From the NCBI GenBank assembly GCA_001179505.1, contig CDMY01000708.1, forward strand, positions 226,408 to 290,407: a DNA stretch of 64,000 nt, given 5' to 3'. Positions 6,238 through 42,029 of the stretch are shown one piece after another. The position numbers and the translations under genes are program-made. The stretch comes from Vitrella brassicaformis CCMP3155. Taxonomy: Eukaryota > Protista > Chromerida. The notes under the pieces are model-generated. The model was given only the letters and a program-made list of their open reading frames with translations. It was not told where the DNA came from and did no database searches. Each line of letters starts with the position of its first letter. Position 1 is the stretch's first letter.

Positions 6238-7079
6238 ATGCGATGGGTTAGCGGCCTCTTCTGCGCATTCGGCCTCTCAGTGGCGGATGCATTCCTTCCC
6301 GCGCAGCCGCACATCACCACACACCATGTGCAGCATCATGCCAGCCGCCGCCTCGCCGTTGTCAGAGCTGCCACTGGCAGTGGCGACAAGAAGACACTCG
6401 AGAGGGTCCTGATTCGGCAAGGCGATGAGTCAGATCTGTCCAAGATCCGCCTCGTGTTGGCTTCACAACTCATGAAGTGAGCGGATGACAGAGCACAAAG
6501 GCTGCGTGACGTCTGCTGTATAGAATGAATGTGTTTGTACTGTGCAGTCCTTTGTTCTTGCAGGCTGAGAGGTTTGTGTGTGCCGAGATGGATGGGCGGC
6601 TGATTGGCTTTGGTCAGGTACGGCCGCTGGATGGCGGCGGGGGCTCTTTCGAGGTGGCATCGCTGTTTGTCGATGAAGCGGAGAGGGGCAAAGGTACGCC
6701 ATGAGGCCATGCAGCATGAGCCGTGTGTGAATGCTGCTGCGTGTGTGTCATTCACTCACTCACTCGGTCAGGCATCGGCAGCGCCATCGTGAGGCGTCTG
6801 TTGGAGCGGCATGGCGCCAAGGGCACGCTGTACCTACTCACATTATCCAAGACGACGCCATTCTGGTATGTGCTTGCTCGATCACAGAGGACAACAAAAC
6901 GCACGAGTGGCTTGTTATGTGTGTCTGATTCGGCAAGGGAGCGATTTGGTTTTCGCTTGGTGGGGTCAGACGAGGACGCTTCTCTGCCGGCACTTCTTCG
7001 GTTGGAGCGAAGTGCTGGGACTCTCGTGGCTGGGGGACTGCTGGGGCAGACAGTGGTGGTCATGACAAAGGATGAGTAG
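6238..7079 (+). CDS. GNAT-family N-acetyltransferase with bipartite plastid-targeting leader (copy 1); exons 6238-6476, 6548-6693, 6772-6865, 6938-7079
   Basis: Spliced product 'MNPLFLQAERFVCAE..IGFGQVRPL..EVASLFVDEAERGKGIGSAIVRRLL..LYLLTLS..PFWERFGF' contains acetyl-CoA motif A (RGKGIG). Signal peptide ends at 'ADA|F', followed by a transit-like region. Confidence 0.85.
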
Positions 7080-7221
7080 GTGGAAGAGACAGTGAGTAAG
7101 CAACGGTCAGATGCTTGTCGTGGGGGCTTATGTGACGTGTGACTCATTCACCTGCGGTCGTCATGTCTGTGTACGCATGTCACGTCCAGACCTTTCTTAC
7201 TCGTGGCATTCATTCGTTCGA

Positions 7222-7403
7222 CCGTTAACGAGGCGCTTACTGATCCATCCATCCATCCATCATGCACTTGACTTGCAGAGCATCCATGTAGCCTGTCTGT
7301 CAATCGACAACCGCTCACTGTTCGGTTGGCCTCGGCTGCATGTGCCGCGATCGCCCTATCAACCCATCCACACTCACGGAAGCCGAGAATGACCGACCAG
7401 CAA
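7222..7403 (-). repeat. ~180-bp dispersed non-coding repeat, copy 1 (reverse complement of 20452-20625)
   Basis: Long near-identical stretch 'caatcgacaaccgctcactgttcggttggcctcggctgcatgtgccgcgatcgccctat...ggaagccgagaatgaccgaccagca' matches the reverse complement of the 20.5-kb copy. Confidence 0.85.
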
Positions 7404-7840
7404 AAGCCCACCTATAAACACAGCACCTATCTGCCACAATCTCGACACTCGCACCAGAAAAAGGAGTGGTGTCCGATTTGGGATGAGTCAGTTGGAGGGG
7501 TAGCTTGATAGGCAACTTGATAGGCAGAGAGGCCCGATAGACACGGGCCAGCAATCTGACCCTGGCGTGCAATCAACGGATCTGACGGGAGACTCATGAT
7601 AAATACACACACACACACACACACACGCGGACCGACTACGGCTGACCTATGAATCCCTCGCCTCGTCAAGATGCGTCAAAGGCCAAGGGCCACAAGAAAA
7701 ATACACTGACTGCACACTGAACTATTGACTGTACACTGAACTATCACAAGAATCAATCAGTCACAAATGCTACACACCGTGTCGCCTGCCCACAAACTCT
7801 TTCATTGGCCCCCCCCTGATACAACCACCCACCCATTCGC

Positions 7841-8110
7841 TCATGCACATGGTTTGCCCTCGCAGAAGCTTGCACAAATGCCACTGCATTTGAGCCTATC
7901 ATTCTCTGAAGCGCACTCTCCTAACAGCACGAGTGCGTCACACATCTTGCAGTAACCCGCACGGTCCTTCTCGAACTCCGGGCACCCCGTGTTGGTCCGC
8001 TGCTCTGAGTTGGCCTCTGAGAGGGCCACAAAAGAGCCGATCACTTTCGGATTCGCCAGAGTCTCCTTAGCTTTAATGCCTAACACGCGCTCTACATGCG
8101 CGCACGCATG

Positions 8111-8145
<35 letters not shown>

Positions 8146-11100
8146 GGGTGAAAGCATATAATTAGATCCTTCACGCCTTACCACTTCGTACCATGGTTGT
8201 TGTCGTTAGTATGTTGCAGTGCTCGTGGAGAGGCCCCATCTTCAGCCTCTTCTGCCTGTCCTGGTGTTGCGCTGCCAACAGGCGGCCACTGCAATACCTC
8301 GATCATGTCTGCCTCAGGTTCTTCAACTTGACTATCAGAGCCCCACCTGCCACACAGCACCCACACAAATGAGGGACTCGTCCTATCTATGGACTTGCCT
8401 CTCTCCGCCCACGTACATAAATGCCGCACACGATGGCACGTCCAAGTGGATGCTCGCGTCGGAGGCCATATCGTATCGACCCAAGCCGTCGACCGCCGTG
8501 AGATTGACATATGTGTGCAGTGGCTCGATCAGCCCCCAATTCCGTGAAGACACCTCCGCCTCGACGCCGAAGCGATTGGCAGCAAAGAGAGAGAGGCGGC
8601 TCTTGTGGGGACTCTTGACATCATAGTCGATCACCAGCGTGGCGGGACGGGCATCCTTCACGTCGCGCAAAAAGTCGGTGAAGGTGCGATAAAGGCGGGC
8701 GGGGATCTGCAGGGTTCGCAGGGTGGCGCCGTTGCTCTGAGTAGGCGCCAGCGCACTCAGCCACACGCACTGGCGGTTGAATGTGCGGTCGCTGCCCTCA
8801 TTAATGGCCGGGCCCGAACGTGGCGGCACTGCATCGCCAAATGCCGCAGGACACTGTCGGATCCACAAGGGAACATCACAGTCGTCCCGGATCATGACCT
8901 TCTGGATGCCCTTCCAGACGTTCTGATGAAGGATCCAGCTCTCGCCCTCCCACTCGGCCGTCACATGGTCGATCACATAGTCTTCCAGCTCATCCGTCCT
9001 GGGCGACTCTTCCGCAGCCACCACAAACGCCTGCTGAGACTTGGCATTATCCTCGGTCTTGGGCTTGGTCATGATCGTCTTCAGGGCCTGAACGACGATA
9101 GATGCACAATAATGTTCGCGGCTATGTTTCCGGTTTCGCCTGCCTCACTGACCGTGTATGAGGCAGCTCCGCTGGAAGTGTTTCTGAAGACCTCGATACG
9201 GTAGCGCGGCGCCGCCGTAGTGCTGTCGGCCTCCTCCTCGGCACTGCTCATCAGGTAGAGCGTACAGTTAAGCATCATGAACTTCGGCTCAGACCCTGGT
9301 GAACCCCTCTTCCCCCGACACACGTTGCGCTTGGAGTCGTAGATGGGCTCGAGGAAGACCCGCAGGTCGTTCGGTGTTCCGGTTCTCTGCCAGTTCGGGT
9401 CGTCGGTCTGCGCCGCCAGCGAGAAACACGACACAGCAACGGTCAGAAGGTGCTCTCGCTCTCTGTTCAGTGAGGAAATGTGCTGTCTTACAATGGCTGC
9501 CCCCCATTTCGCGGTATCATCCTGCAACCGGCGGGCATCAGATGCAGACGACCCGCTCGTTGTTTCGTCATCTGCCCTGAGCAAGCGAAAAACGGCCTCC
9601 TCCCCTTCCAGAGTCAAATCAGCGTGCAAACCTGACAAACAAGAAGCATGAATGACACACCATATTGTGGTTCATTACATGAGCCCACCCATGTCCACAC
9701 TTTCTTACCGGTCAGGGGGATGTTGCCGAAGTTGTCTGAGCCATTGAAGTAGACGACGCTCTCATTGTACTTCTTGTACGCATCCTGTTTCCATTCATCC
9801 GTTCATCCGTTCATCGTACACTGACTGTGCTTCTTGTACCTTGAAAGAGAAGATCTCGAGCTCGTCAGCCGGAATCACCCGCTCCACCTCGGCCTCCACA
9901 AATCGCAGCAGTGAGCCCATGTCCACCGGATTCGCTATCTCACGGCTGAACAGCGACAATTGGCGTCCTCGCAGACTGTCATCAGTAGCCTTCCGGGTGG
10001 CCGTCCGGATGCGGTCGACCTCCTTTGTTCCGACGCAATCGTGCAGTCGTTTGGTCAGCGTCTTTTGGCTTTGAGAGAAGGAACCGCGGAAGTCCAGTAT
10101 CTTATAGAGATCCACAATGGCTAGAGTCATGAGGCGCTGGTTGCGAACGTAGTAGTCCATCGTCGCCATGGCGATCTTCTTGGCGTACTCGAATGGCGGC
10201 GTCGCCTGGCCGTTTGGCTGTGTGGGTCTGAGCGACGTCCAGTCCCAGCCAGCGCCGCTGATGAGGGTCTCGCTCCCTGCACTCATACATGAAGAGGAGA
10301 ACGATGGTGATGTCAGACGATGTGCTGTGTGACTGTCTGTTTAATGATATACGTGGGAGTTACCCAGAAAGAAGTGTCCGTGGGATGCGAGGGCCGTTGT
10401 GACTTCGTACGACGCCATCAGGCATGCGTCGAATGAAAGCAGGTCGAAGCGAAAGTCTTCCGGCATGCCCGCGTCCTTAACGCCGTTCTGGGACAACAAG
10501 ACAAGTCCAGTGACGGTCTCTGGCGTCGGACGGTCTGTATCGCTTACTCTGATGTTCGTTTCTAGAGCCCAGAGGTTCATCAGCGAATCCCAGTTGCCGT
10601 GGCTAGAATCGCCGCCGAAACTGCACACCATCCACACATGCCTCTCGATACGCGCCTTGCCGTTCACCGTGATTTACCCTTTCCGACCGACGCCATGATC
10701 CCAAAAAGTGAGCGCGTAATGCTCTGCAGGAAAGTCCTTCAACGCATCCGCGATGAAGTCCTTCATATCACACACACAAGCAAGGAAGGAAGGAAGGAAG
10801 GAATGGGCACGTGCCGATGGGTTGTCATCTCGCTCACCCGCAGCACTTTGCCGTCGTCCATGTTGCTTTCGCCCCAGTCCCTTTTGAGCAGCCAGCGACG
10901 CCGGCTGGTGCTGTTCTCGTTCTCGTACGGGTCGCCGATCATCAAGAGCTCGTAAGCCCCGGAAAACTGCTGCCTCACCTGAACGAACCGTCGCCATTCA
11001 AATGCAAAAGATGACAGGCATCCATGTTCGTTTTTCATATGAGGATGGGTGGACGTGCGTGCATACATACCTCTCTGGCATTGACCTCTGGGGTCGCCTC

Positions 11101-12836
11101 TGGACAGATGACCATCTGGTGGATCGCTCTATGAGACGAATCGTCCACCTCAGGGTCGGCGCGGTCGACGAGCACCAGCAGGTTGATGTCGCTCTTGGGG
11201 ATCTGCAGCATCTCCTTTAAGTCACTCATGGCGTAGCCCTCCAAGTTGTTGTCCTGATGGCGCGTGCGCACACACATACGCACACACACACAGACGAAGA
11301 ACGAGCGTCGTCTCCCTGACATGGCGTTGTTGGCGACGTCCGTCTCACTTACCGCGTTCATATACACGAGATGCGTCCAGTGTGCCTTCCTCATGCTGCC
11401 GAGGCGCTCCGCCACCCCCGTACAGAAAGTGGGCGGCCTCAGCTGGTACGCCCATGCGGGACTGTCGCATTCAGGCAATCTATACGAGCCACTTGCCGAC
11501 TGGTCGGCACAATCTTCCTTTGAGTGGATCCGGCACGCGGGCTTATCGTCTGACGACCGCTTCCGGCACTCGTTGGTACACCGGCATCCACCATTGGTGA
11601 AGACCTGCTCGATGCCCCCCTCGACGCACGCATCGTAGTACTGCCCAAAGGTGGGCCCCAGGCACTTGCATGGGCCCTTGTCGCAGTCCTCCTGCAGAAC
11701 GGTGCAGAAGCGCTCCAGACCGGGGATGTCGGCGCCCTCCTTCTGGCAGCTCCTCTCGATGCATACACAGCCGGTGAGGGAGAACAAGACGGTCCGTGCC
11801 GCGCACTCGTCGGGCTCGCACGTCTCCACGCCGAGCTGTGCTGCAGGTGCTGGTGGGTCAGCTGGATCTTGGACTGGTGGGTCAGCTGGATCTTGGACGG
11901 GGGGGAGCTGTGCTGGATCTTGGGGGGGGAGCTGTGCTGGATCTTGGACTGGTGGGTCAGCTGGATCTTGGACGGGGTCCAGTGCTGACGATGGTTGGTA
12001 CCGACCTTGGAAGCACTCGTCGTTGTCTCCGCGGACGTAGTTCTCTGCACACACGCACTTGCCCACCCCGCTGCCGGCGCCCCGCTCGCCCTCGGGGATC
12101 CGCTGAACCTGCACACACACACACACAGACCAACGACACACACAGACGGACATCCATGTGCGCATCTCTTTGTGTGTGTGGTTGGTTTGGTCCTTTACCT
12201 CGCAGACTTCGTTCTCCTCTTCTGAGCATTCGATCGTCGAACACAAAGACTCACAGCGACCGAACCTGCACACAGATAATACACAACACACGGACATGCC
12301 TCCATGCAGTCCATTCATCCATGTGTGGGTATGTGTGAGCTGACCCGTCGTCTTGCGATTGGCAGGTCTCGTTCCATTTGCAATATGCAGCCAGACCAGT
12401 GCACTCTAGACCTGCACACCATCACACAGACACACAATCTCACCCACATCCGAGTGTCCTTTTGTCACACGCACCAGGTTCGCAGTCGCCGCCGTCGAAT
12501 TCGCATTCATAATTGTAGCACTCAAAGTCGCACACCGTGTCATTAAACCACTTCAAATCACGGCAATCCCCAAAGCAGCCGGAGGGAATCGGCGATGCTG
12601 GGGCTGACACACCCAACACACACACACACACACACAGATGCATGAGTACGTGTACTTGCCTGTGGGTCTGTATTTGTGTATTTCGTACCTTGCAGCCGCC
12701 GCCTGCGCTGTGTGATCTTCCTCATGTGACTGCTGCCACCGCCCCGCCTGGCCTGTCTGCCCGGCATGCACACGACCAGCAAGCCGAGCACAGCGATGCC
12801 ACACACAACAACCGAAAAAAGCACCAGTCGCGACAT
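7841..12836 (-). CDS. Multidomain clostripain-family (peptidase C11) cysteine protease: signal/anchor, LNR(Notch)-like, EGF-like/Cys-rich, Pro-rich repeat, C11 domain, long C-terminal region, Cys-rich tail
   Basis: Spliced motifs 'WTHLVYMNA|DNNLEGYAMSDLKEM', 'LLVLVDR', 'PAEHYALTFWDHGVGRKG|FGGD' (His at 10695-10697) and 'FDLLSFDACLMASYEV' (Cys at 10422-10424). LNR-like 'CDFECYNYECEFDGGDC'; hydrophobic N-terminus. Junctions I checked stay in frame to a TGA at 7841. Confidence 0.85.
11845..11985 (-). repeat. Coding tandem repeat (P)VQDPA(D/QL)PP, about 5 units, inside the C11 gene
   Basis: Repeated 'gctggatcttggac/ggg' units translate as PVQDPADPPVQDPAQLPPQDPAQLPPVQDPADPPVQDPADPP. Confidence 0.9.
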
Positions 12837-12984: not shown

Positions 12985-13813
12985 GCGGCCTCTTCTGCGC
13001 ATTCGGCCTCTCAGTGGCGGATGCATTCCTTCCCGCGCAGCCGCACATCACTACTCACCATGTGCAGCATCATGCCAGCCGCCGCCTCGCCGTTGTCAGA
13101 GCTGCCACTGGCAGTGGCGACAAGAAGACACTCGAGAGGGTCCTGATTCGGCAAGGCGATGAGTCAGATCTGTCCAAGATCCGCCTCGTGTTGGCTTCAC
13201 AACTCATGAAGTGAGCGGATGACAGAGCACAAAGGCTGCGTGACGTCTGCTGTATAGAATGAATGTGTTTGTACTGTGCAGTCCTTTGTTCTTGCAGGCT
13301 GAGAGGTTTGTGTGTGCCGAGATGGATGGGCGGCTGATTGGCTTTGGTCAGGTACGGCCGCTGGATGGCGGCGGGGGCTCTTTCGAGGTGGCATCGCTGT
13401 TGGTCGATGAAGCGGAGAGGGGCAAAGGTACGCCATGAGGCCATGCAGCATGAGCCGTGTGTGAATGCTGCTGCGTGTGTGTCATTCACTCACTCACTCG
13501 GTCAGGCATCGGCAGCGCCATCGTGAGGCGTCTGTTGGAGCGGCATGGCACCAAAGGCACTCTGTATCTACTCACATTATCCAAGACGACGCCATTCTGG
13601 TATGTGCTTGCTCGATCACAGAGGACAACAAAACGCACGAGTGGCTTGTTATGTGTGTCTGATTCGGCAAGGGAGCGATTTGGTTTTCGCTTGGTGGGGT
13701 CAGACCAGGACACCTCTCTGCCGGCACTTCTTCGGTTGGAGCGAAGTGCTGGGACTCTCGTGGCTGGCGGACTGCTGGGGCAGACAGTGGTGGTCATGAC
13801 AAAGGATGAGTAG
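12985..13813 (+). pseudogene. GNAT acetyltransferase copy 2: near-identical duplicate lacking the start ATG (pseudogene or re-targeted isoform)
   Basis: Colinear with 6251-7161 at an offset of 6734 bp. The position matching copy-1 ATG is an in-frame TGA (12972). The first in-frame ATG is at the end of exon 1. Splice sites are intact. Confidence 0.65.
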
Positions 13814-14152
13814 GTGGAAGAGACAGTGAGTGAGCAATGGTCAGATGCTTGTCGTGGGGGCTTATGTGACGTGTGACTCATTCACCTACGGTCGTGTTCT
13901 GGCGAGATGTACGACACGGAAGGGGCGGGATGGGACGTGTCGCATGTTGTGTCGCATGTCGTGTGTGTGTGGCCTGGCCACCTCCTCTCGCACTCTCTGC
14001 TGTGCTGTGCACACACAGCTTTCACTTCACACACGGGGTGGAGGGAGGGAGGGATGTCATGAAGTCAAGTGAAGTGGAGTGCACTGACTCATCTACCGAA
14101 AGCTCTTCAGTCTACAAAGGCCCTCACTGATGTCCACGCACTGCCAACCCTC

Positions 14153-19900: not shown

Positions 19901-20392
19901 AGCAGCGACTCCATCGTTGAGCGGGAGCCATCATCGGAGCGATTCCTCCAGTGGATCGAAGGCAGAGGCAGCGCGCCCACAGAGCCGGCCGCCCCGTCCA
20001 AGAGTGAGCCACATATCTGTCAGCGGCCCCAGGACGCCGCGACCCGGCAGCAGCAGGTCGGCGTGCGGCACAACAGGAAACGTTTGAGCGCCGCGAGCCA
20101 GCGTGAGCTGAGCAAGACGGTGGCGCGCCTCCGCTCTAAGATGCAGCTCGAGTATGGGGAAGACTGGTGGGCAGGGGGGCAGATGCCAACACCTGACGCA
20201 GCGGACGAGAAGGCCAATGATGGGAGAGGGGCCAGCGGCGAGGGGCTGGCCACTAAGGCCGTCGAGAGTGGGAAAGCGGCCGCCAGGTCCGGTGGCCTGG
20301 AGGTCAGTTACTGGTTTTTATGTCTGGCGGTGGTTGTTCTGGCGGCGCTGTTGGTCTGGTGGATGGGGACGGCGCAGTCAGCTGCGGTCTAA
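16981..20392 (+). CDS. CAMK-like protein kinase-fold protein (predicted pseudokinase) with long Ser/Pro/Arg-rich tail and C-terminal transmembrane helix
   Basis: Subdomains 'FGAKRY', 'LQHPRILRLVAVYET', 'HRNIKP', 'KLGQFDVA', 'CGTPGYVAPEML', 'VDVFSAG|VVLYALLVGSLPF', 'VSEEGKDLVTRMM', 'DRPLAAECLQDPWF'; terminal 'YWFLCLAVVVLAALLVWWMG'. The 5' exon assignment is less certain. Confidence 0.78.
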
Positions 20393-20451
20393 CACCTTTT
20401 TCTGTTGCGAGTACTGAGATTGTGGCAGATAGGTGCTGTGCTTGGCTGTGT

Positions 20452-20625
20452 TTTGTGCTGGTCGGTCATTCTCGGCTTCCGTGAGTGTGGATGGGTTGAT
20501 CATAGGGCGATCGCGGCACATGCAGCCGAGGCCAACCGAACAGTGAGCGGTTGTCGATTGACAGACAGCCTACATGGATGCCCTGGAAGTGCATGGTGGA
20601 TGGATGGATGGATCAGTAAGTGGCT
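20452..20625 (+). repeat. ~180-bp dispersed non-coding repeat, copy 2
   Basis: Reverse-complement match to 7222-7403; begins about 60 bp after the kinase stop codon. Confidence 0.85.
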
Positions 20626-21126
20626 TGTTAGCGGCCAGCCAGAAAACGAAAAAATGCCATAGCATGAATCGAATGATAGGCCGTCAGACAAAGTCGCCCT
20701 GCCAATGGCTGTCTGTCTCTCTGTGTTCACCATGGCCACACCGCACCACACATCGTGACACAAACCAACTGTGCCGCCCACCGCACACAGAAAGCTGCCC
20801 TCATGTGTATAATGCAATGTCTGTGATCGGCTTCTCAACAGACATACCACCTCGACGTCATATCTCTATAGCCTACTGACAAGGAGAGAGAGTGTCATAG
20901 GACGTATGAATGACTACGAAGGGAGCGCTCTGACGCGTGTGCAGAGCAGAGCAGACAGACATATGTAAAGTACGGACGTACGTACACACCTGCACGGACC
21001 CTCCCACAGCCCCACAGCCCGCCCTGACTGCAAAAGACACACATGTGGGTCTCACTCACCACACAGACGCGCACACAATACAATGGTGCGTCGCTCTCTC
21101 CATCTTTTGCGCCACGTTCAGACGGG

Positions 21127-21160
<34 letters not shown>

Positions 21161-21988
21161 AGCAGTACGCATGCACGCCGCACAGATAGCAGAAAGGCAC
21201 ACCATGAACGTGTACGTACGCACGTATGTGATCATATTGGCACGCCACGCGCAGGTAGACAAGTACATGCTCACCACCACCACTGCACAGCCGACTGGAA
21301 GCCGAGCAGCATCAAAAAAGGGCTGCTCATGGTGGGTCCGTCTGTCAGAGGCACGTGCACAGGCGGCCAGCGTCACATGCATACAGATCGAAGGAAAAAA
21401 CACAACACATCATGCTCCTCCCTCCCTCCCTGTTTGTATGTATGCTCAGCAATGAAACACGGTGATGTGGGGTGTGGGGTAAGGTGTGGTGACTTGTGAA
21501 GGAAAGACAGTCAGCCGACAGACAAGTAGCCCACGAACAGCATACGCAATTCAGCACAAGACAGACACGAGTGAGTTGAAAGTTCGGCGCCATGTGAGTC
21601 CCCCGTGATGTGTTTGTCTGTGCTGCAACAATAACGACATCCGCCTCTCTCTGTCTGTCCTCCCTCCTACACATAGACATCAGCCGCTTTATGGATACGC
21701 TCTCATCATGATCGATCACCACACACAGGAAGGGACACACACAGGTCACAGACAGACCGACCGACCGACAGACAGCGAGAGAGACGAAACCTACACACAT
21801 ACGTATCTCTGTGTGTGGTGGTGCGCTCCCTCCGTTTCCATGTCAGCACCGCGGTACGTACACATCACACACGCAGCACTTGGCAATACAAATCCACTGG
21901 CCCGAGTGACACACAAGCACTTGCCCCCCCACACAAACCGTGCGGCCATCTATCCATCAGCCGTTGAGTCAGGGAGAGTGAGTGGGCA

Positions 21989-22110
21989 CTAAGATGCCTT
22001 CTGGCCATTCCACCCTCCGCCGCACTCGGCGGCCGTCGAATGCATCCGAGCGCCGGAGCGCCGCTTGCGTGACATCTGCCTGTCTTGCTTCGCTCTCTCC
22101 CTCCTCTTCC
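21989..22110 (-). pseudogene. Relic 3' end of a third ApiAP2 paralog
   Basis: The minus strand reads '..ERAKQDRQMSRKR..' and, in a shifted frame, 'DGRRVRRRVE'. This matches the C-termini of both AP2 genes (KQDRLVSSRKRP..GRRVRRK; KQDRQVSSRKRP..SRRVRRRVK), and the same 3' flank follows. Confidence 0.6.
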
Positions 22111-22844
22111 CGCCTGTGTGTGTGTGTGTGTGTGTAGGGATGGATGGATGGACGTCATCATTGCGGTATGCATACACACATCCACACATGCCGTGAGACG
22201 ACACACAGTCAGTCAGAGAGACGAAACATAAGAGAGCAAGGCAGACACACCACAGACTACAAAAGATAGCAGTGAGGGCACACGACCGACCAGAGAAATG
22301 AGGGCCGCACCAACTCCATGGAGCCAAGCAGACAGACAGACAGACAGCCAAACAGACGATAGGCAGGCAGGCGTGTGCACATCCACACATCCATCCATCC
22401 ATCCATCGAATTGGCATACGACGGCCGGCACCTGACAATGCCCACCTGACCGGCCTGTCTCACTCCGCCAGCGCTGCACAGCCCACTGGGACAAAAACAC
22501 CGGCTGGGCGGCCGGGCGAAAAAACACCGGCTGGACGGCTGGGCGGGGACACACCAGGCATGCGATGGACACAGATCGAAGGAAGAAATACATCACAGCA
22601 AATCCTCCCTCCCTCCCTCCCTCCCTGTGTGTATGCTCAGCAATGCAGCACGGGGGACACCACACACGGCATCACATCACGATCGATACAAATCCACTGG
22701 CCCCCGACCAATACACAAAAACTTGCCCCTCACACACACACACATGAACATCGTACCGCTATGAACCCACCGGCCGACCCCACCACCCCCCGAATGCAGA
22801 GCGAGTGAGTGAGTGAGTGGGTGGGCAGCAAAAGGTCCCGACGG

Positions 22845-24870
22845 CTACTTGTTGGTCTTCCGTCGCACTCTGCGGCCCTCTGGCGCCTCTGAGGGCCGCT
22901 TGCGTGACGATACCAGCCTGTCTTGCTTCTCTCTCTCAGTCTGCGCCACCATCGTCTTCCGACAGTGAATCGCTTCTGCCTTGGCCTCACTGTCACCCCC
23001 ATACTCAGACAGAGAGAAGTTGCGGCTCCGTCGCTTTCCAGACGCATCAACCCAGTTGGCCACCCATGCCTTGCTCTTCTTGCACCACCTCACACCCCTG
23101 TGGCCGCTCTGCTTCTCGACTGGCTGCCGGAGGCTCGCCGCACCGCTCGCTTCCGCCTCCTTGCGGCACGCGACGGCCTTGTCGTAGGCCTCCTCGATGT
23201 CGCCGTGTGTGCTGATGGTGAAGGTCTTCAAGTGCTTCCTGCCGCCCTGCTCCCAGTACGCCCCCCATGCCTTGTTGCCTTTGTCGAAGTAGACGCCCTT
23301 GACATTCTTGGCGAGCAGCTGGTCGATGAGCTTCCAGCGACCGCGGCCGAGACTGGGGACACTCTGAGCAGAGAGGGAAGGGACACACAGAAAACCATTA
23401 TCGAAAAGGGCCACACATCGCATTTCGTGCACTCGCGTACCTTGCGCTGATCCGGCCAGATCTTCTCCATGTCCTTGCGCCGCTTGATGGCCGTCTCCTT
23501 GGCGCGCTTCTCGCCCATCTTGGCCACAGAGAAGTACTCCTGCTTCTGCTTGCCGTTCTCGTACCATGACGCGATCCAATAGCCGTTCTCGTCATCGTGG
23601 TACACACCGGTGATCTCGTTCTTGTTGCGGCTCATGATGGGACGGCCAGCCTTCTCGTTGTCTTGCTCGTTCTGCCGGCGACACGCCTCTGCCTCGGCCT
23701 TGGCCTCGTCGTAGCCCCCATGCTTGCTCACGGAGAAGCTCTTGGGTTTCCACTTGCCGTCCATCTTGACCATGGCACTCCACGTTTGGCGCTTGTCGTC
23801 GAAGCGCACGCCTCGGACGGTCGACTGGTGGGTGGGGGCTGTCGGCCCGGCCGCCTTGCCGGCCGCCTTGGGCTGCTTGAAGGTGGAGTCGCTCAGATGG
23901 TCACCACCACTCCCTGACACACACACACAGCACACAAAGCAGTCTGGTGTAGGTCGCGCCATCGGCATGTGTGCGAATGTGGGTGTGTCTGCGTACCTGA
24001 GCTCTCGGGCTCATCGTCCTCATCCTCGTCGTCATCATCATTGTCTGCAACAGGAAAGCACACCAGAGATGTGCTCGACGCGCTCTCTCTCTCTCTCCCT
24101 CTGTGTGTGTGTGTGTGTGTGTGTGTGGCTGACCATCGGGTGGGTTGTAGTCCTCGTCGTTGTCGTCATCGCTGCTGCCCTGGTCGTCGCTCGAGCCGCC
24201 CTCGTCGTCAGGCGGGTCGCCACCCACACGGCCACGAGCAGCACCCTTGCGAGCCTGCCGCTTCCGGCCGAGGCGATCTGCCGCAGCAAACACGGATAGC
24301 ATCCCCATGCAGTGGTTCGCGTTGTGCCGTGAATGTGTGTGCATCGGCATACCGTTGAGGGGCATCACCTCGCTGCGGGCAGCGGCGAAACGGTCTGCAG
24401 CGGCAAAAGAAATCCCTGACCATGATCGCCACCCACACCCACACCGCCAGCGGCACCACCTGAGCCCGACACCTGGGTCGCAGCACCCTGACACATCACA
24501 CACCACACCACACCAGAGGATGGTCTCTCCATGGGGCAGCCGTCTGTGCGTGTGTGGTGTTGTCCTCACCACATGGGTCATGTTGTCGAGATCGTCGCTT
24601 GCACCTGAGCCGGTCGGCGCCCGGGTCGATAAAGCACCCATAGTGGAGTCGGTCTGAGCACACACAAGAGGGAGAGGCAGGAAATGAGACGACCTGCGAG
24701 AACTGCCCGTGGCCTCCGCACGCACGGCGGCATGACAGACACGGGGCGTGCAGTGGTGTGCGTATTCCTGTCTGACTGTTTGTCTCACATCATAGTCAGC
24801 ACGAGAAACCGAAGCCGACGCGCCTGCAGCTTTCTCCCCCTTGCCCTTGCCCTTGCCGCCCGACACAATG
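22845..24870 (-). CDS. ApiAP2-type transcription factor with four AP2 domains (paralog A); true start probably further upstream (candidate ATG 25302)
   Basis: AP2 domains: 'VRGVRFDDKRQTWSA..SFSVSKHGGYDEAKAEAEACR', 'ITGVYHDDENGYWIASW..YFSVAKMGEKRAKETAIKRR', 'VKGVYFDKGNKAWGAYW', 'GHRGVRWCKKSKAWVANW..FSLSEYGGDSEAKAEAIHCR'. An acidic low-complexity N-terminal region precedes them. Confidence 0.88.
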
Positions 24871-39006: not shown

Positions 39007-40912
39007 ATGGGTAATAAGTTGTCAAGCAACAGTCCCTCGGACAAGGGCGAGGGGAAGGACAAGAAGGGAGCATATGCATCATCATCGCTTGAGGTCAGAA
39101 AGAACACACCACAAGCATGCCACCGGTTGAGTGTCGTGTGTCATCACATTGCCTCTCCCTCTTCTGCCTTGTGTGTGTGTGTGTGTGTGTGTGCGTGTGT
39201 ATTAGGTGGCTTCCACTATCGGTGCTGCGTCTACGCGGGCGCCAACCACCGGCACGTATAGTGACACTGTCGGCAGCGGAGACGATAATATGACACACGT
39301 GGTGGGAAGAGCACCCCAAGGCACACGCAGCAGCTGCACCAATGGATGGATGGATGGGTGGATCCCTCTGTGGTTTGCTGTGTCAGGGTGGTGCGACTGA
39401 GATGTCCGGATCGGTCAGCGAGATGATGCCCCTCAACCGTATGTGTACACACATGCGGAGATCACATGCGCGCAAGAACGGTTGTGTTGCTTGGCGCTGC
39501 AGACCGCCGTGAGCGGCACCGGCAGGCCCGCCAGGGCGGGGGTGCCGGTGGACGTGTGGGTGGCGACCCGTCGGACGATGAGGGCGGGTCGAGCGACGCC
39601 GAAAGCAGGAGTGACGAGAGCAGCAGCGGCGATAACGATGATGAGAATGATGGTCAGCCACCCGATGGAGACAAACAGACACAGAATGAGAGTGCGTCGA
39701 TCGAACCTTGGGTGCGATTCTCGGTCGCAGACGATGACGATGAAGACGATGAGCCCGAGAGCTCTGGTAGGCGAATGCACACACTTTCACACACATGCCG
39801 ATGGCACGACGCACACCGCACTGCTGTGTGTGCCGTTTGTGTGTCAGGGAGTGGTGGTGACCATCTGAGCGACTCCACCTTCAAGCAGCCCAAGGCGGCC
39901 GGCAAGGCGGCCGGGCCGACAGCCTCCATCCACCAGTCGACCGTCCGAGGCGTGCGCTTTGACGAGCAGCGCCAAACGTGGTTTGCCGGTGTCAAGGAGG
40001 GCGGCAAATGGAAAGAGAAGAGCTTCGCCGTGAGCGTGTATGGCTACGACAAGGCCAAGGCAGAGGCAAAGGCGTGTCGCCGGCAGAACGAGCAAGACAA
40101 CGAGAAGGCCGGCCACCCCATCAAGAGGCTCAGCAAGAACGAGATCACCGGCGTGCGTCGCGACGACAAGAACAGACGGTGGGTCACGGCATGGTACGAG
40201 AATCGCGAGATCAAGCAGGAGTACTTCTATGAGGACAAGTTGGGTGAGGAGGGCGCCAGGCAGGCGGCCATCGCGCGGCGGGAGATGATGGAGAAGATCT
40301 GGCCCAATCAGCGAAAGGTACGCGAGTTTGTATGAATGACATGTGTGTGGCTTGCCTTGCTCATTGGGTCTGTGCGTCCCTTCCCTCTCTGCTCAGACTG
40401 TCCCCAGTCTCGGCCGCGGTAGCCGGAAGCTCATCGACCAGCTGCGTGTCAAGAAGGTCAAGGGCGTCTACTTCGGCGAACGCAACAAAGCGTGGCTTGC
40501 GCAGTGGTACGAGCGCGGAAACCCGCGGTTCAAGAGCTTCCCCATCAACAAGCACGGCGGCATCAAGAAGGCCTACGACAAGGCCGTCGCGTGTCGCAAG
40601 GCGGCGGAGGCGAGCGGTGCGGCGAGCATCCAGCAGCCAGGCGAGAGGCAGAGCGGCCACACGGGTGTGAGCTGGCACAAGCAGAGCAAGGCATGGATGG
40701 CCAGCTGGCGTGATGTGTCTGGCAAGCAACAGTGCCGCTACTTCCCTGTGTCTTCGTGGGGGGGTGACAGCGAGGCCAAGGCAGCTGCGATTCGCTGTCG
40801 GGAGAAGATGGTTGAGCAGACCAAGAGAGAGAAGCAGGACAGGCAGGTGTCGTCACGCAAGCGGCCATCTGGGGCGACAGAGAGCCGCAGGGTTCGACGG
40901 AGGGTGAAATAG
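39007..40912 (+). CDS. ApiAP2-type transcription factor with four AP2 domains (paralog B)
   Basis: 'VRGVRFDEQRQTWFAG', 'ITGVRRDDKNRRWVTAW', 'VKGVYFGERNKAWLAQW', 'GHTGVSWHKQSKAWMASW'; exon structure matches paralog A. An alternative upstream in-frame ATG lies at about 38761. Confidence 0.88.
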
Positions 40913-42029
40913 GTCGGGGGGCATGCTAGTGCCCACTCACTCTCCCTCCGGTCGGACGAAGGGTTTTGTCGTGTCTGTGCATTTGTGTCTTTTTTGTGGA
41001 CGACTGCTTGGTGATAGATGGCCGCACGGTTTGTGTGGGGGGGCAAGTATTTGTGTGTCAGTCGGGCCAGTGGATTTGTATTGCCAAGTGCTGCGTGTGT
41101 GATGTGTACGTACCGCGGTGCTGACATGGAAACGGAGGGAGCGCACCACCACACACAGGTCCCTCTCGCTGTCTTTCTGTCTGTCGGTCGGTCGGTCGGT
41201 CTGTCACCTGTGTGTGTCCCTTCCTGTGTGTGGTGATCGATCATGATGAGAGCGTATCCATCAGCGGCTCATGTCTATGTGTAGGAGGAGGACAGACAGA
41301 GAGAGGCGGATGTCGTTATTGTTACAGCACAGACAAACACATCACGGGCGACTCACATGGCGCCGAACTTTCGACTCACTCGTGTCTGTCTTGTGCTGAA
41401 TTGCGTATGCATCGTATGTTCGTGGGCTATGTAATTGTCCGGCTGAGTGTCTTCCCCTTCACACGTCACCACACCTTACCCCGCACCCCACATCAGACAA
41501 GACACACACACACACATCCCTTCTCATCATGGGTCTGTTCTTTCATATAAGCTCCTCAATCACTGAGAGACGTATGTTCGCAGGCAAGTGGTGTTTTCAT
41601 TCATCGACCCACAGAAAGACAGACAGACAGACAGACAGGCAGGCAGCCGGCAGTCGGGCAGCGAGAGAGCAGTGGAGAGAGCGTTGGTGTCAATGAGTGC
41701 CGTGCGATTTCTCTCTCGCCCTGCAGCCAGCCCTGCCCACACACGCCATTAGCCGGCTAATAAGACGGCAAAACACACGTCAAAACAGACAGACAGACAG
41801 ACAGGCCGACAGAGGGAGGGAGGGAGGGAGGGATGGAGAGAGACCACGCCACGAACCGCACCCGCACAAAGCGCTAAGGAAAAAGACGACGTGTGTGTCG
41901 CTCGGGGCTAGCTTTCGAGCCCGCAGAGACGCGAGCAATCCCCACCCCCACACATACTAGATGGCACACACCGACCGAGCGCCCACCCCGCGCTCACTCG
42001 ACTCACTCGACTCACTCGAGCTTGCCGTT

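What the first reader, a model, noticed from the sequence alone, without database searches (positions are those of the whole stretch)
7841..12836. Eukaryotic multidomain clostripain (C11) protease fused to LNR/EGF-like extracellular modules
Seen: an intact C11 signature once introns are removed (YMNA|DNNLE, WDHG His, FDAC Cys). It is preceded by a hydrophobic leader, an LNR-like module, EGF-like Cys-rich units and a Pro repeat, and followed by about 600 aa of unknown sequence ending in an 8-Cys module. Known: C11 is mostly a bacterial/archaeal secreted protease family with a His-Cys dyad; LNR modules bind Ca2+ and regulate proteolysis in Notch and pappalysins, and also occur in apicomplexan secreted proteins. 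Inference: a horizontally acquired, intronised protease rebuilt into a secreted or surface enzyme with possible LNR-based autoinhibition. This is the best candidate for an undescribed system in the window.
Basis: partly seen in the sequence, partly recalled or inferred. Interest (0 to 1): 0.75.

Follow-up and report, generated by a model that had tools for sequence, protein, structure and literature searches.

The report
Secreted clostripain-type protease with Notch-type module
This is a real, transcribed 17-exon gene of the alga Vitrella brassicaformis for a secretory clostripain-type (C11) cysteine protease with a Notch-type calcium-binding module at its front, but it is already in public databases and belongs to a known, still unstudied protease family of apicomplexans and their algal relatives.

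Summary
Observation confirmed. Window 12836->7841 (minus strand) holds one gene of 17 exons, all with GT..AG introns of 55-100 nt, coding 1251 aa. It equals the public Vitrella brassicaformis protein CEM31013.1 / A0A0G4GLL7 ("LNR domain-containing protein") for residues 1-1227. Pfam gives Peptidase_C11 at 104.6 bits and one LNR just above threshold. His519, Cys571 and the S1 Asp569 are intact. An AlphaFold model of the protease part matches only solved C11 proteases. RNA contigs confirm four introns.

"EGF-like" and ShK labels get no HMM support. About 480 C-terminal residues stay unassigned.

The C11 domain sits in a eukaryotic clade. It is sister to the apicomplexan "calcium-binding EGF domain" C11 proteins of Cryptosporidium, Eimeria, Besnoitia, Cystoisospora and Cardiosporidium (the last also carries an LNR). 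The best prokaryotic matches are only 26-34% identical. Any gene transfer was therefore ancient, as a 2016 paper already proposed.

Vitrella has at least five paralogous protease units whose N-terminal modules are swapped (LNR, or Kelch plus TSP1). A single LNR about 290 residues upstream, beyond a proline-rich linker, gives no support for Notch-style autoinhibition.

The scan found this family before on other DNA of this genome. Verdict: new member of a known kind, low to moderate interest.

The parts
7841..12836 (-). Whole coding region: 17 exons, CDS 3756 nt, 1251 aa plus stop. Exons run 12836-12689, 12603-12475, 12411-12345, 12265-12199, 12108-11353, 11253-11071, 10978-10838, 10760-10678, 10620-10548, 10487-10364, 10276-9840, 9784-9709, 9631-9492, 9407-9153, 9087-8417, 8346-8192 and 8091-7841.
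   Evidence: All introns are GT..AG, the phases are consistent and there are no internal stops. The model is identical codon by codon to public protein P0006 for residues 1-1227. RNA contigs confirm introns 12109-12198, 9408-9491, 8347-8416 and 8092-8191. The spliced homologue P0001 confirms the junctions from YMNA|DNNLE to FSFK|DAYKKY, including the 60-nt intron 10488-10547.
12768..12836 (-). Hydrophobic leader (aa 1-23): a signal peptide or signal anchor.
   Evidence: It is the only Kyte-Doolittle window above 1.6 in the protein. The leader is conserved in paralog P0003.
12690..12767 (-). Acid-free basic stretch (aa 24-49) ending in RRRRLQ. Together with the leader, aa 1-50 hold 10 K/R and no D/E.
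   Evidence: Composition count. Any role, such as a convertase site or juxtamembrane segment, is inference only.
12482..12577 (-). LNR (Lin12/Notch repeat) module, Cys59-Cys90, with six Cys and the FDGGDC calcium-binding motif.
   Evidence: Pfam PF00066 scores 27.8 bits on the exon and 21.7 bits on the whole protein, against a cutoff of 21.2. It aligns to the LNR-A/B/C repeats of the human Notch1 NRR structures 3i08 and 3eto.
12013..12403 (-). Cys-rich region A (Cys96-Cys169, spread over exons 3-5), containing an RGD tripeptide.
   Evidence: The Cys pattern is read directly from the sequence. No EGF family hit appears at E<=0.05. The same cassette is 86% identical in paralog P0003 and also occurs in P0004/P0005.
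11824..11994 (-). Pro-rich repeat linker (aa 176-232; DPxQDPA(D/Q)(P/L)PP units).
   Evidence: Direct reading. Composition is 18 Pro in 60 residues.
11422..11820 (-). Cys-rich region B (Cys234-Cys366, 16 Cys), directly ahead of the protease domain.
   Evidence: Conserved in paralogs on L002 (70-81%) and in the transcript contig L003 (56%). No Pfam family hit.
9591..11397 (-). C11 (clostripain-family) protease domain, aa 375-775. His519 is at 10697-10695, Asp569 at 10430-10428, Cys571 at 10424-10422, and Arg523-Lys524 at 10685-10680.
   Evidence: Pfam PF03415 scores 104.6 bits. H, D and C fall in near-invariant columns of a 100-sequence alignment. HMMER alignment to clostripain 9cip and thetapain 6n9j. 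AlphaFold pLDDT is mostly 80-98 over aa 375-775. The Foldseek top hits are all C11 proteases, E 5e-18 with TM up to 0.74.
8193..9590 (-). Lineage-specific C-terminal extension (aa 776-1168), fold unknown.
   Evidence: It is 70-75% identical in Vitrella paralogs P0156, P0157 and P0158, and 45-48% identical in transcript L003. Pfam, NCBIfam, a PDB profile search and the Atlas gave no hit. AlphaFold pLDDT is about 30.
7844..8089 (-). Last exon with the 8-Cys C-terminal module (Cys1205 to Cys1249, ending GKPCA-stop).
   Evidence: RNA contigs of run X1 read through 7832-8091 and 7400-7843. Paralog P0158 ends with the same eight Cys and GKPCA. The public model instead splices out 7816-7916. No ShK or other family hit.

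Best explanation
This is the Vitrella brassicaformis gene for CEM31013.1 / A0A0G4GLL7, a secretory-pathway clan CD, family C11 (clostripain-type) cysteine endopeptidase.

Shown here: one 17-exon gene; an intact His519/Cys571 dyad with Asp569 two residues before the Cys; a C11 fold; one bona fide LNR module; transcription with correct splicing.

Inferred:
- The N-terminal hydrophobic leader takes the protein into the ER. There the LNR (loaded with Ca2+), the two Cys-rich regions and the 8-Cys tail become disulfide-bonded.
- The enzyme is exported, or held at the cell surface by an uncleaved signal anchor, as a zymogen.
- It activates itself by cleavage in the loop just after the catalytic His. 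Arg523-Lys524 lie at +4/+5 from the His, where the HMMER alignment places Arg and Glu of clostripain's HGGGAREK stretch. From my own knowledge, clostripain is cut in this stretch.
- It then cleaves after Arg/Lys.
- The LNR/Cys-rich/Pro-rich front and the conserved C-terminal extension serve to target or bind substrate (cell-wall or matrix proteins) rather than to gate the active site. Paralogs keep the protease and the C-terminal extension but replace the front by a Kelch propeller plus TSP1 repeats.

In evolutionary terms it is one copy of a Vitrella-specific expansion. That expansion is sister to the apicomplexan C11 proteins with EGF (and LNR) modules.
For: - Gene model. RNA splice support. 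Identity to the public protein.
- C11 membership: HMM 104.6 bits. Alignment to clostripain shows DHG/NHG and an identical FDACLM motif. H, D and C fall in columns that are at least 90% invariant. The fold match is exclusively to C11 structures.
- LNR.
- There is a single N-terminal hydrophobic segment and 47 Cys, 32 of them in aa 51-384 ahead of the protease domain.
- Paralogs with swapped N-termini and a conserved C-terminus.
- Sister relation to the apicomplexan C11-EGF clade (SH-aLRT 97), with named eukaryotes on one side of a branch (92) against 30 prokaryotic loci.
- Identities of the apicomplexan members.
- Literature: PMC4850289 and PMC8710574.
Against: - No enzymatic, localisation or processing data exist for this protein or any close relative.
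- No RNA contig of this gene's own sequence covers 9575-11887 or exons 1-4. The contigs lying on 12013-12577 carry 1-5 mismatches and may come from paralogs. Linkage of the LNR front to the protease therefore rests on the uninterrupted 756-nt exon 5, the splice logic and the public annotation.
- The leader is about 20 residues long and is followed by a strongly basic stretch. Cleaved signal, type II anchor or another topology cannot be told apart here.
- The Arg-Lys activation site is an analogy from alignment only.
- The fold and function of about 480 C-terminal residues are unknown.
Confidence: 0.8

Rival explanations
1. One reading: the LNR module docks on the protease or on its activation loop and keeps it latent until Ca2+ loss or a mechanical or proteolytic trigger. 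This would be analogous to the Notch negative regulatory region.
For: The LNR is genuine and keeps its Ca2+-ligand motif. LNRs are linked to control of proteolysis in Notch and pappalysins (my own knowledge, not tested here). An environmental protein, P0025, also has two LNRs ahead of a C11 domain, and Cardiosporidium P0011 carries an LNR after its C11 domain. The pairing therefore recurs.
Against: - There is only one LNR, whereas the Notch NRR uses three plus an HD domain. No such partner domain is detected.
- The LNR lies about 290 residues before the protease, beyond a Pro-rich linker and a second Cys-rich region.
- The closest paralogs have the same protease and tail with no LNR at all: Kelch/TSP1 in P0156 and P0157, neither in P0158.
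- In Cardiosporidium the LNR lies on the other side of the protease.
- Docking could not be assessed with the tools available.
Confidence: 0.1
2. There are two genes: a short secreted LNR/Cys-rich protein (like the 255-aa paralog P0003) and a separate C11 protease. They are merged only by gene prediction.
For: Vitrella annotations do contain short LNR-only (P0003) and C11-only (P0002, P0158) models. No RNA contig with this gene's own sequence spans exons 1-5. Other public models in this family look merged, for example P0156 with a GST tail.
Against: - Exon 5 is one stop-free 756-nt exon. It starts with the Cys-rich A end, which is 97% identical to the P0003 locus L001 over 37 aa, and it ends with the first C11 strand HLVYMNA.
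- There is no in-frame stop from 12405 to 11038.
- The paralog and L003 transcripts keep Cys-rich B, the C11 domain and the tail on one RNA.
- P0002 and P0003 lie on short contigs or at contig ends, so they look truncated.
Confidence: 0.05
3. The product is not extracellular. The hydrophobic core followed by an acid-free, Arg/Ser/Gly-rich stretch (aa 24-49) acts as a bipartite leader to the complex plastid or another internal compartment, or as a reverse signal anchor that leaves the enzyme in the cytosol.
For: Residues 1-50 hold 10 K/R and no D/E. The published idea that the eukaryotic C11 clade came in with a plastid-bearing ancestor (PMC4850289) fits an organellar history. The trypanosome C11 protease PNT1 is organellar (same paper).
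Against: LNR modules, 47 Cys, TSP1 repeats in the paralogs and EGF in the apicomplexan sisters are all hallmarks of extracellular or luminal disulfide-bonded proteins. No targeting predictor was available, so this remains a reading of composition only.
Confidence: 0.05

Closest known systems
Apicomplexan 'calcium-binding EGF domain-containing' C11 proteins: Cryptosporidium muris B6ABJ5 / C. andersoni OII76856.1 (C. parvum cgd6_670 is described the same way in PMC8710574), Cardiosporidium cionae KAF8819695.1, Cystoisospora suis PHJ18833.1, Besnoitia besnoiti PFH35659.1, Eimeria intestinalis KAL8434321.1
   Same: The C11 domain is the sister clade in the tree (SH-aLRT 97). These are large multidomain proteins that mix C11 with Cys-rich extracellular modules, and Cardiosporidium also has an LNR. 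None has a demonstrated activity.
   Different: In the apicomplexan proteins scanned here, the C11 domain comes first and the EGF_CA/EGF/LNR modules follow. Here the LNR and Cys-rich modules precede the protease, no EGF HMM is matched, there is no second hydrophobic segment, and a 480-aa Vitrella-specific tail with an 8-Cys end follows. C11 domain identity is only 31-35%.
Clostripain (Hathewaya histolytica; PDB 9cip) and the Bacteroidales C11 proteases PmC11 (3uws/4yec), thetapain and iotapain (6n9j, 6nag) and the P. distasonis C11 zymogen (6mzo)
   Same: Same family by HMM and fold. The protein shares the His-Gly and F-D-A-C-L-M motifs, the Asp two residues before the Cys, and a C-terminal subdomain. 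Basic residues follow the His in the stretch where clostripain is processed.
   Different: Sequence identity is 14-19% in the structural alignments. The bacterial enzymes have 350-530 residues without LNR, Cys-rich or Pro-rich modules and without the long tail. This gene has 16 spliceosomal introns.
Vitrella paralogs CEM-series P0156 (1759 aa), P0157 (1452 aa, contig CDMY01000955.1) and P0158 (1068 aa)
   Same: Identity is 72-81% over the protease plus C-terminal extension, with the same Cys-rich B region and the same 8-Cys end in P0158.
   Different: P0156 and P0157 have an N-terminus made of a Kelch-type propeller plus TSP1 repeats instead of LNR and Cys-rich A. On L002, two protease units follow each other in one open frame.
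Notch negative regulatory region / pappalysin LNR modules
   Same: One module has the six-Cys LNR pattern and the D-G-G-D-C calcium motif. It aligns to Notch1 LNR-A, B and C.
   Different: This is a single copy rather than three. No HD/SEA-like partner is detected by Pfam, and the neighbouring protease is a cysteine protease rather than a metalloprotease.

Membership tests
Peptidase family C11 (clostripain family, clan CD; Pfam PF03415) | Profile HMM match above the curated threshold | tested here: met
   104.6 bits, E 1.1e-29, against a cutoff of 25.8 on P0006 residues 385-712. Three colinear exon hits. The spliced homologue P0001 scores 99.5 bits.
Peptidase family C11 (clostripain family, clan CD; Pfam PF03415) | Catalytic His-Cys dyad in the H-G and D-A-C motifs | tested here: met
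   His519 (WDHG) and Cys571 (FDACLM) fall in columns that are at least 90% invariant across 100 homologues. They align to the NHG and FDACLM motifs of clostripain 9cip. Positions.
Peptidase family C11 (clostripain family, clan CD; Pfam PF03415) | Acidic S1 residue (Asp two residues before the Cys) that gives Arg/Lys specificity | tested here: met
   Asp569 is present and near-invariant. PMC4850289 names the equivalent Asp134/Cys136 pair in PNT1. The specificity itself was not assayed.
Peptidase family C11 (clostripain family, clan CD; Pfam PF03415) | Caspase-like alpha/beta fold with the C11 C-terminal subdomain | tested here: met
   AlphaFold pLDDT is mostly 80-98 for residues 375-775. Foldseek ranks 1-14 are all C11 structures, E down to 5e-18, TM 0.60-0.78 normalised by target length.
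Peptidase family C11 (clostripain family, clan CD; Pfam PF03415) | Autoprocessing and thiol-dependent Arg/Lys endopeptidase activity | not testable with these tools
   Needs recombinant protein. Arg523-Lys524 after the His is only a positional analogy to clostripain.
LNR / Lin12-Notch repeat (Pfam PF00066) | Profile HMM match above the curated threshold | tested here: met
   27.8 bits on the exon ORF and 21.7 bits on the whole protein, against a cutoff of 21.2, so marginal there. Paralogs with the same cassette score 45 and 54.7 bits.
LNR / Lin12-Notch repeat (Pfam PF00066) | Six Cys and the Asp/Asn calcium ligands (D-G-x-D-C end) | tested here: met
   The module runs from C59 (CFGDC) through NDTVC, DFEC, YNYEC and EFDGGDC to C90, read directly. 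It aligns to Notch1 NRR LNR-A/B/C. Ca2+ binding itself was not tested.
EGF-like domains (Pfam EGF, EGF_CA, EGF_3, hEGF, cEGF) | Profile HMM match | tested here: not met
   No EGF-type family at E<=1 on the exon ORFs, or at E<=0.05 on P0006 residues 90-180 and 230-384. The apicomplexan sisters match strongly.
ShK toxin-like (ShKT) domain | Profile HMM match for the 8-Cys C-terminal module | tested here: not met
   No Pfam hit at E<=1 on window:7844-8125. No PDB sequence hit at E<=10.
Notch-NRR-type autoinhibitory unit | Three tandem LNRs packed on a heterodimerisation (HD/SEA-like) domain that hides a cleavage site | tested here: not met
   There is one LNR only, no further Pfam family is detected, and a Pro-rich linker and a second Cys-rich region separate it from the protease. 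Physical docking was not testable.
Apicomplexan C11 + calcium-binding-EGF protein group | C11 domain within that clade, and EGF_CA modules C-terminal to the protease | tested here: not met
   The C11 domain is sister to that clade, not inside it. There are no EGF_CA modules, and the domain order is reversed.

The most novel reading that the evidence does not exclude
The Vitrella C11 expansion could be a modular system of extracellular proteases. Interchangeable front modules (LNR, or Kelch/TSP1) would set the target or the trigger. Some members would be made as tandem multi-protease polyproteins that cut themselves apart at the 8-Cys/TSP1 junctions. In this copy the Ca2+-loaded LNR would gate activation. 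That would be a cysteine-protease counterpart of LNR-controlled proteolysis, otherwise known only from animals.
Probability: 0.1. Interest if true: 0.55.

Novelty: new member of a known kind. Interest (0 to 1): 0.27.

Why it matters
C11 proteases are well studied in gut bacteria and in one trypanosome. The apicomplexan and chromerid branch has no known activity, substrate or role, even though it is conserved in Cryptosporidium, Eimeria, Toxoplasma-like coccidia and their free-living algal relatives. Vitrella keeps at least five protease units with swapped adhesive front ends. This gives a natural series for asking what the non-catalytic modules do, and a non-pathogenic organism in which to study the family. 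The finding itself adds an improved gene model (the 3' end) and a catalogue of the paralogs. It does not add a new kind of system.

Tried and rejected
- Fold of the C-terminal extension: two AlphaFold runs failed. In the 791-residue run pLDDT was about 20-58 beyond residue 400 of the model. In the 390-residue run with a 7-sequence alignment, mean pLDDT was 30.
- Other searches on that extension also failed. The PDB profile search gave only a chance hit at E 0.12. Pfam and NCBIfam found nothing. Atlas feature searches gave noise or nothing.
- Word search restricted to residues 761-1241: only Vitrella paralogs were found.
- EGF and ShK labels: rejected for lack of any HMM hit.
- Recent bacterial donor: rejected. 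The 80 best loci from 185,579 prokaryotic species genomes are 25-39% identical (best aligned segment) and come from many phyla. None falls inside the eukaryotic clade.
- A second copy of the gene in the window: none.
- The public annotation's last intron (7816-7916): not adopted. RNA contigs read through both of its ends, and paralog P0158 keeps the 8-Cys ending encoded there.
- Runs X2 and X3 are DNA-like contigs and say nothing on expression. X1 and X8 were only guessed to be RNA, but X1 and X8 contigs lack four GT..AG introns, so they derive from spliced RNA.

Full report
**What is there**

The window has about 58% G+C, with (TG)n-rich short introns. On the minus strand between 12836 and 7841 I built a gene model from open frames, splice signals and phase bookkeeping. 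A later correction added a 60-nt in-frame intron at 10488-10547, which spliced homologues revealed.

The final model has these properties:
- 17 exons and 16 GT..AG introns of 55-100 nt.
- A CDS of 3756 nt, coding 1251 codons plus a stop at 7841-7843.
- Four introns (12109-12198, 11254-11352, 10488-10547, 9408-9491) are in frame and stop-free. An ORF scan alone hides them.

**Independent support for the model**

- RNA-derived contigs. Run X1 carries contigs with no mismatch that join 7832-8091 | 8192-8344 | 8415-8619 and 9274-9407 | 9492-9574. X1 and X8 carry contigs that join 12013-12106 | 12197-12266. All four gaps are exact GT..AG introns on the minus strand.
- A transcript-derived relative. 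The JGI contig L003 is an uninterrupted ORF coding P0001 (479 aa). P0001 reproduces my junctions from HLVYMNA|DN.LE through WDHGVGRKG|FGGD and FLG|SET..SGAGWDW to the exon ending in YNES.VYFNGS.
- The public protein. The exhaustive protein search returned P0006 (1241 aa), which is NCBI CEM31013.1 and UniProt A0A0G4GLL7, "LNR domain-containing protein", from Vitrella brassicaformis CCMP3155, on a 290-kb contig. A codon-by-codon comparison shows my model equals P0006 for residues 1-1227.
- The one difference. The public model splices out 7816-7916 and ends GGPMKEFVGRRHGV. X1 contigs instead read through both ends of that "intron". Paralog P0158 ends ...CSGICARFCDGKPCA, exactly like the read-through.

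Whole-protein analyses used the public P0006.

**Domains**

- *C11 protease.* Pfam on P0006 gives Peptidase_C11 at 104.6 bits (residues 385-712) and LNR at 21.7 bits (residues 67-91, cutoff 21.2). On the exon ORF alone the LNR scores 27.8 bits.
- *Catalytic residues.* The PDB sequence search hits only C11 proteases. It aligns WDHG with clostripain's NHG, and the FDACLM motif is identical. In a 100-sequence alignment, His519, Asp569 and Cys571 fall in near-invariant columns.
- *Fold.* An AlphaFold model of residues 375-1165 is confident for 375-775. Its Foldseek hits 1-14 are all C11 structures: thetapain 6n9j, clostripain 9cip, the P. distasonis zymogen 6mzo, iotapain 6nag and PmC11 3uws.
- *LNR.* It aligns to the three LNRs of the Notch1 NRR and keeps the DGGDC end.
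- *Cys-rich regions.* Two regions (C96-C169 and C234-C366) and the 8-Cys tail match no EGF, ShK or other family.
- *Hydrophobic segments.* The only one is residues 4-23. The next 26 residues are basic and acid-free.
- *C-terminal extension.* Residues 776-1168 are conserved only in Vitrella paralogs and in L003. Every attempt to assign them failed.

**Relatives**

Vitrella has several paralogs:
- P0156 and P0157 carry a Kelch-type propeller plus TSP1 repeats, then C11 and the same tail.
- P0158 carries C11 and the tail.
- A second tandem unit lies on contig L002.
- P0003, P0004 and P0005 share this gene's leader/LNR/Cys-rich-A cassette but continue into TSP1 repeats.

The front end is therefore a shuffled cassette, while the protease plus tail is the conserved core.

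Outside Vitrella, the nearest C11 domains are about 31-35% identical. They belong to large proteins that combine C11 with EGF_CA/EGF modules, and in Cardiosporidium with an LNR as well. They are named "calcium binding EGF domain-containing protein" in Cryptosporidium, Cystoisospora and Cardiosporidium. The Eimeria protein is annotated as hypothetical. The Besnoitia protein is annotated as hypothetical at NCBI and as EGF-like domain-containing at UniProt. A Mesostigma (green alga) protein is also near. An environmental protein, P0025, has two LNRs ahead of its C11 domain.

**Origin**

A scan of one genome per prokaryotic species found hundreds of C11 genes. The 80 best are only 25-39% identical (best aligned segment) and come from many phyla.
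- In a FastTree of 231 domains, a 20-row clade holding the Vitrella family contains no prokaryotic locus.
- In an IQ-TREE (PMSF, quick search) of 60 domains, the Vitrella family (support 100) is sister to the apicomplexan clade (99), with support 97 for the pair.
- In the same tree, all named eukaryotes lie on one side of a branch (92) against 30 prokaryotic loci.

The gene was therefore not freshly acquired by Vitrella. If there was a transfer, it predates the chromerid-apicomplexan split. This picture was published in 2016. Grewal et al. listed C11 members in Chromerida (including a Vitrella entry), Coccidia and Chlorophyta, and proposed a lateral transfer into a plastid-bearing ancestor (PMC4850289). 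The C. parvum protein cgd6_670, described as carrying EGF-type hydroxylation-site and C11 (clostripain) domains, has been localised by immunofluorescence as non-micronemal (PMC8710574). Two earlier notes of this scan, on other pieces of the same genome, reached the same reading.

**Mechanism**

Shown here: an intact catalytic apparatus and fold, a real LNR, many Cys, one N-terminal hydrophobic segment, and transcription.

Inferred: entry into the secretory pathway; disulfide and Ca2+ loading; export or surface anchoring as a zymogen; self-cleavage after the His loop at Arg523-Lys524; and Arg/Lys-directed cleavage of extracellular substrates. The His-loop site is placed by analogy. In the HMMER alignment these residues fall on clostripain's HGGGAREK stretch, where, to my knowledge, clostripain is processed. 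I read the front modules and the tail as targeting parts.

There is a single LNR, a long linker, and no HD-like partner detected by Pfam. Paralogs lack the LNR, and Cardiosporidium has the reverse domain order. I give it about 0.1.

**Limits**

- No RNA contig of this gene's own sequence covers exons 1-4, or the stretch 9575-11887.
- Contigs lying on the LNR and Cys-rich-A exons carry 1-5 mismatches and may come from paralogs.
- The single-gene status therefore rests on the stop-free 756-nt exon 5, which contains both the Cys-rich-A end and the first C11 strand, on conserved splice logic, and on the public annotation.
- Topology (cleaved signal or anchor) and the role of the tail are open.

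**Verdict**

This is a new member (an N-terminal-LNR variant) of a known but functionally unstudied family. Interest is low to moderate.

Noticed in passing
window 6251-7161 and 12985-13895: A 911-bp direct repeat (98.5% identical, spacing 6734 bp) brackets the protease gene. Each copy carries part of a plus-strand GNAT acetyltransferase gene (Pfam Acetyltransf_1, 27.5 bits on 13259-13435). The arrangement is repeat, unique gene, repeat. It may be a segmental duplication or an insertion footprint, or possibly an assembly effect.
   Followed up: partly
window 7816-7916: The public model CEM31013.1 removes this 101-nt GT..AG 'intron' and so loses the last five of the eight Cys. RNA contigs read through both ends, and paralog P0158 keeps the full 8-Cys ending. 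The deposited 3' end looks mispredicted, or is a minor isoform.
   Followed up: yes
L002 4869-5800 (Vitrella contig CDMY01000955.1) and L003 1-520: On L002 the first protease unit has no stop after its 8-Cys module. The frame runs on through a TSP1 repeat into the Cys-rich B region of a second C11 unit. The transcript contig L003 likewise runs from the tail of one unit straight into the Cys-rich region of the next. Some family members may therefore be tandem multi-protease polyproteins.
   Followed up: partly
L001 10001-11575 (Vitrella contig CDMY01000593.1); P0004, P0005: The leader, LNR and Cys-rich-A cassette of this gene recurs at 72-97% amino-acid identity (exon by exon) at the start of other Vitrella genes that continue into TSP1 repeats instead of a protease. 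This points to exon or cassette shuffling among extracellular proteins.
   Followed up: partly
window 12013-12403 (protein residues about 160-165): An RGD tripeptide (YVRGDNDEC) sits in the last loop of Cys-rich region A and is conserved in paralog P0003. It could be an adhesion motif or chance.
   Followed up: no
window 21463-24033 versus 39730-41495; 7222-7467 versus 20392-20634: There are inverted repeats of 1179 bp (83%) and 502 bp (90%) about 17 kb apart. There is also a 250-bp inverted repeat (89%) just downstream of the protease gene's 3' UTR.
   Followed up: no
window 11140-11326 and 12075-12261: The (TG)n/(CA)n microsatellites inside introns 4 and 5 attract hundreds of unrelated contigs in the DNA runs. 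This gives depth spikes and many false joints, so joints between about 11291 and 12112 in the read-laying table are artefacts.
   Followed up: yes
window 7400-7843: An RNA contig of run X1 is contiguous for at least 440 nt below the stop codon. The transcript therefore has a long 3' UTR, or overlaps a neighbouring transcript.
   Followed up: no
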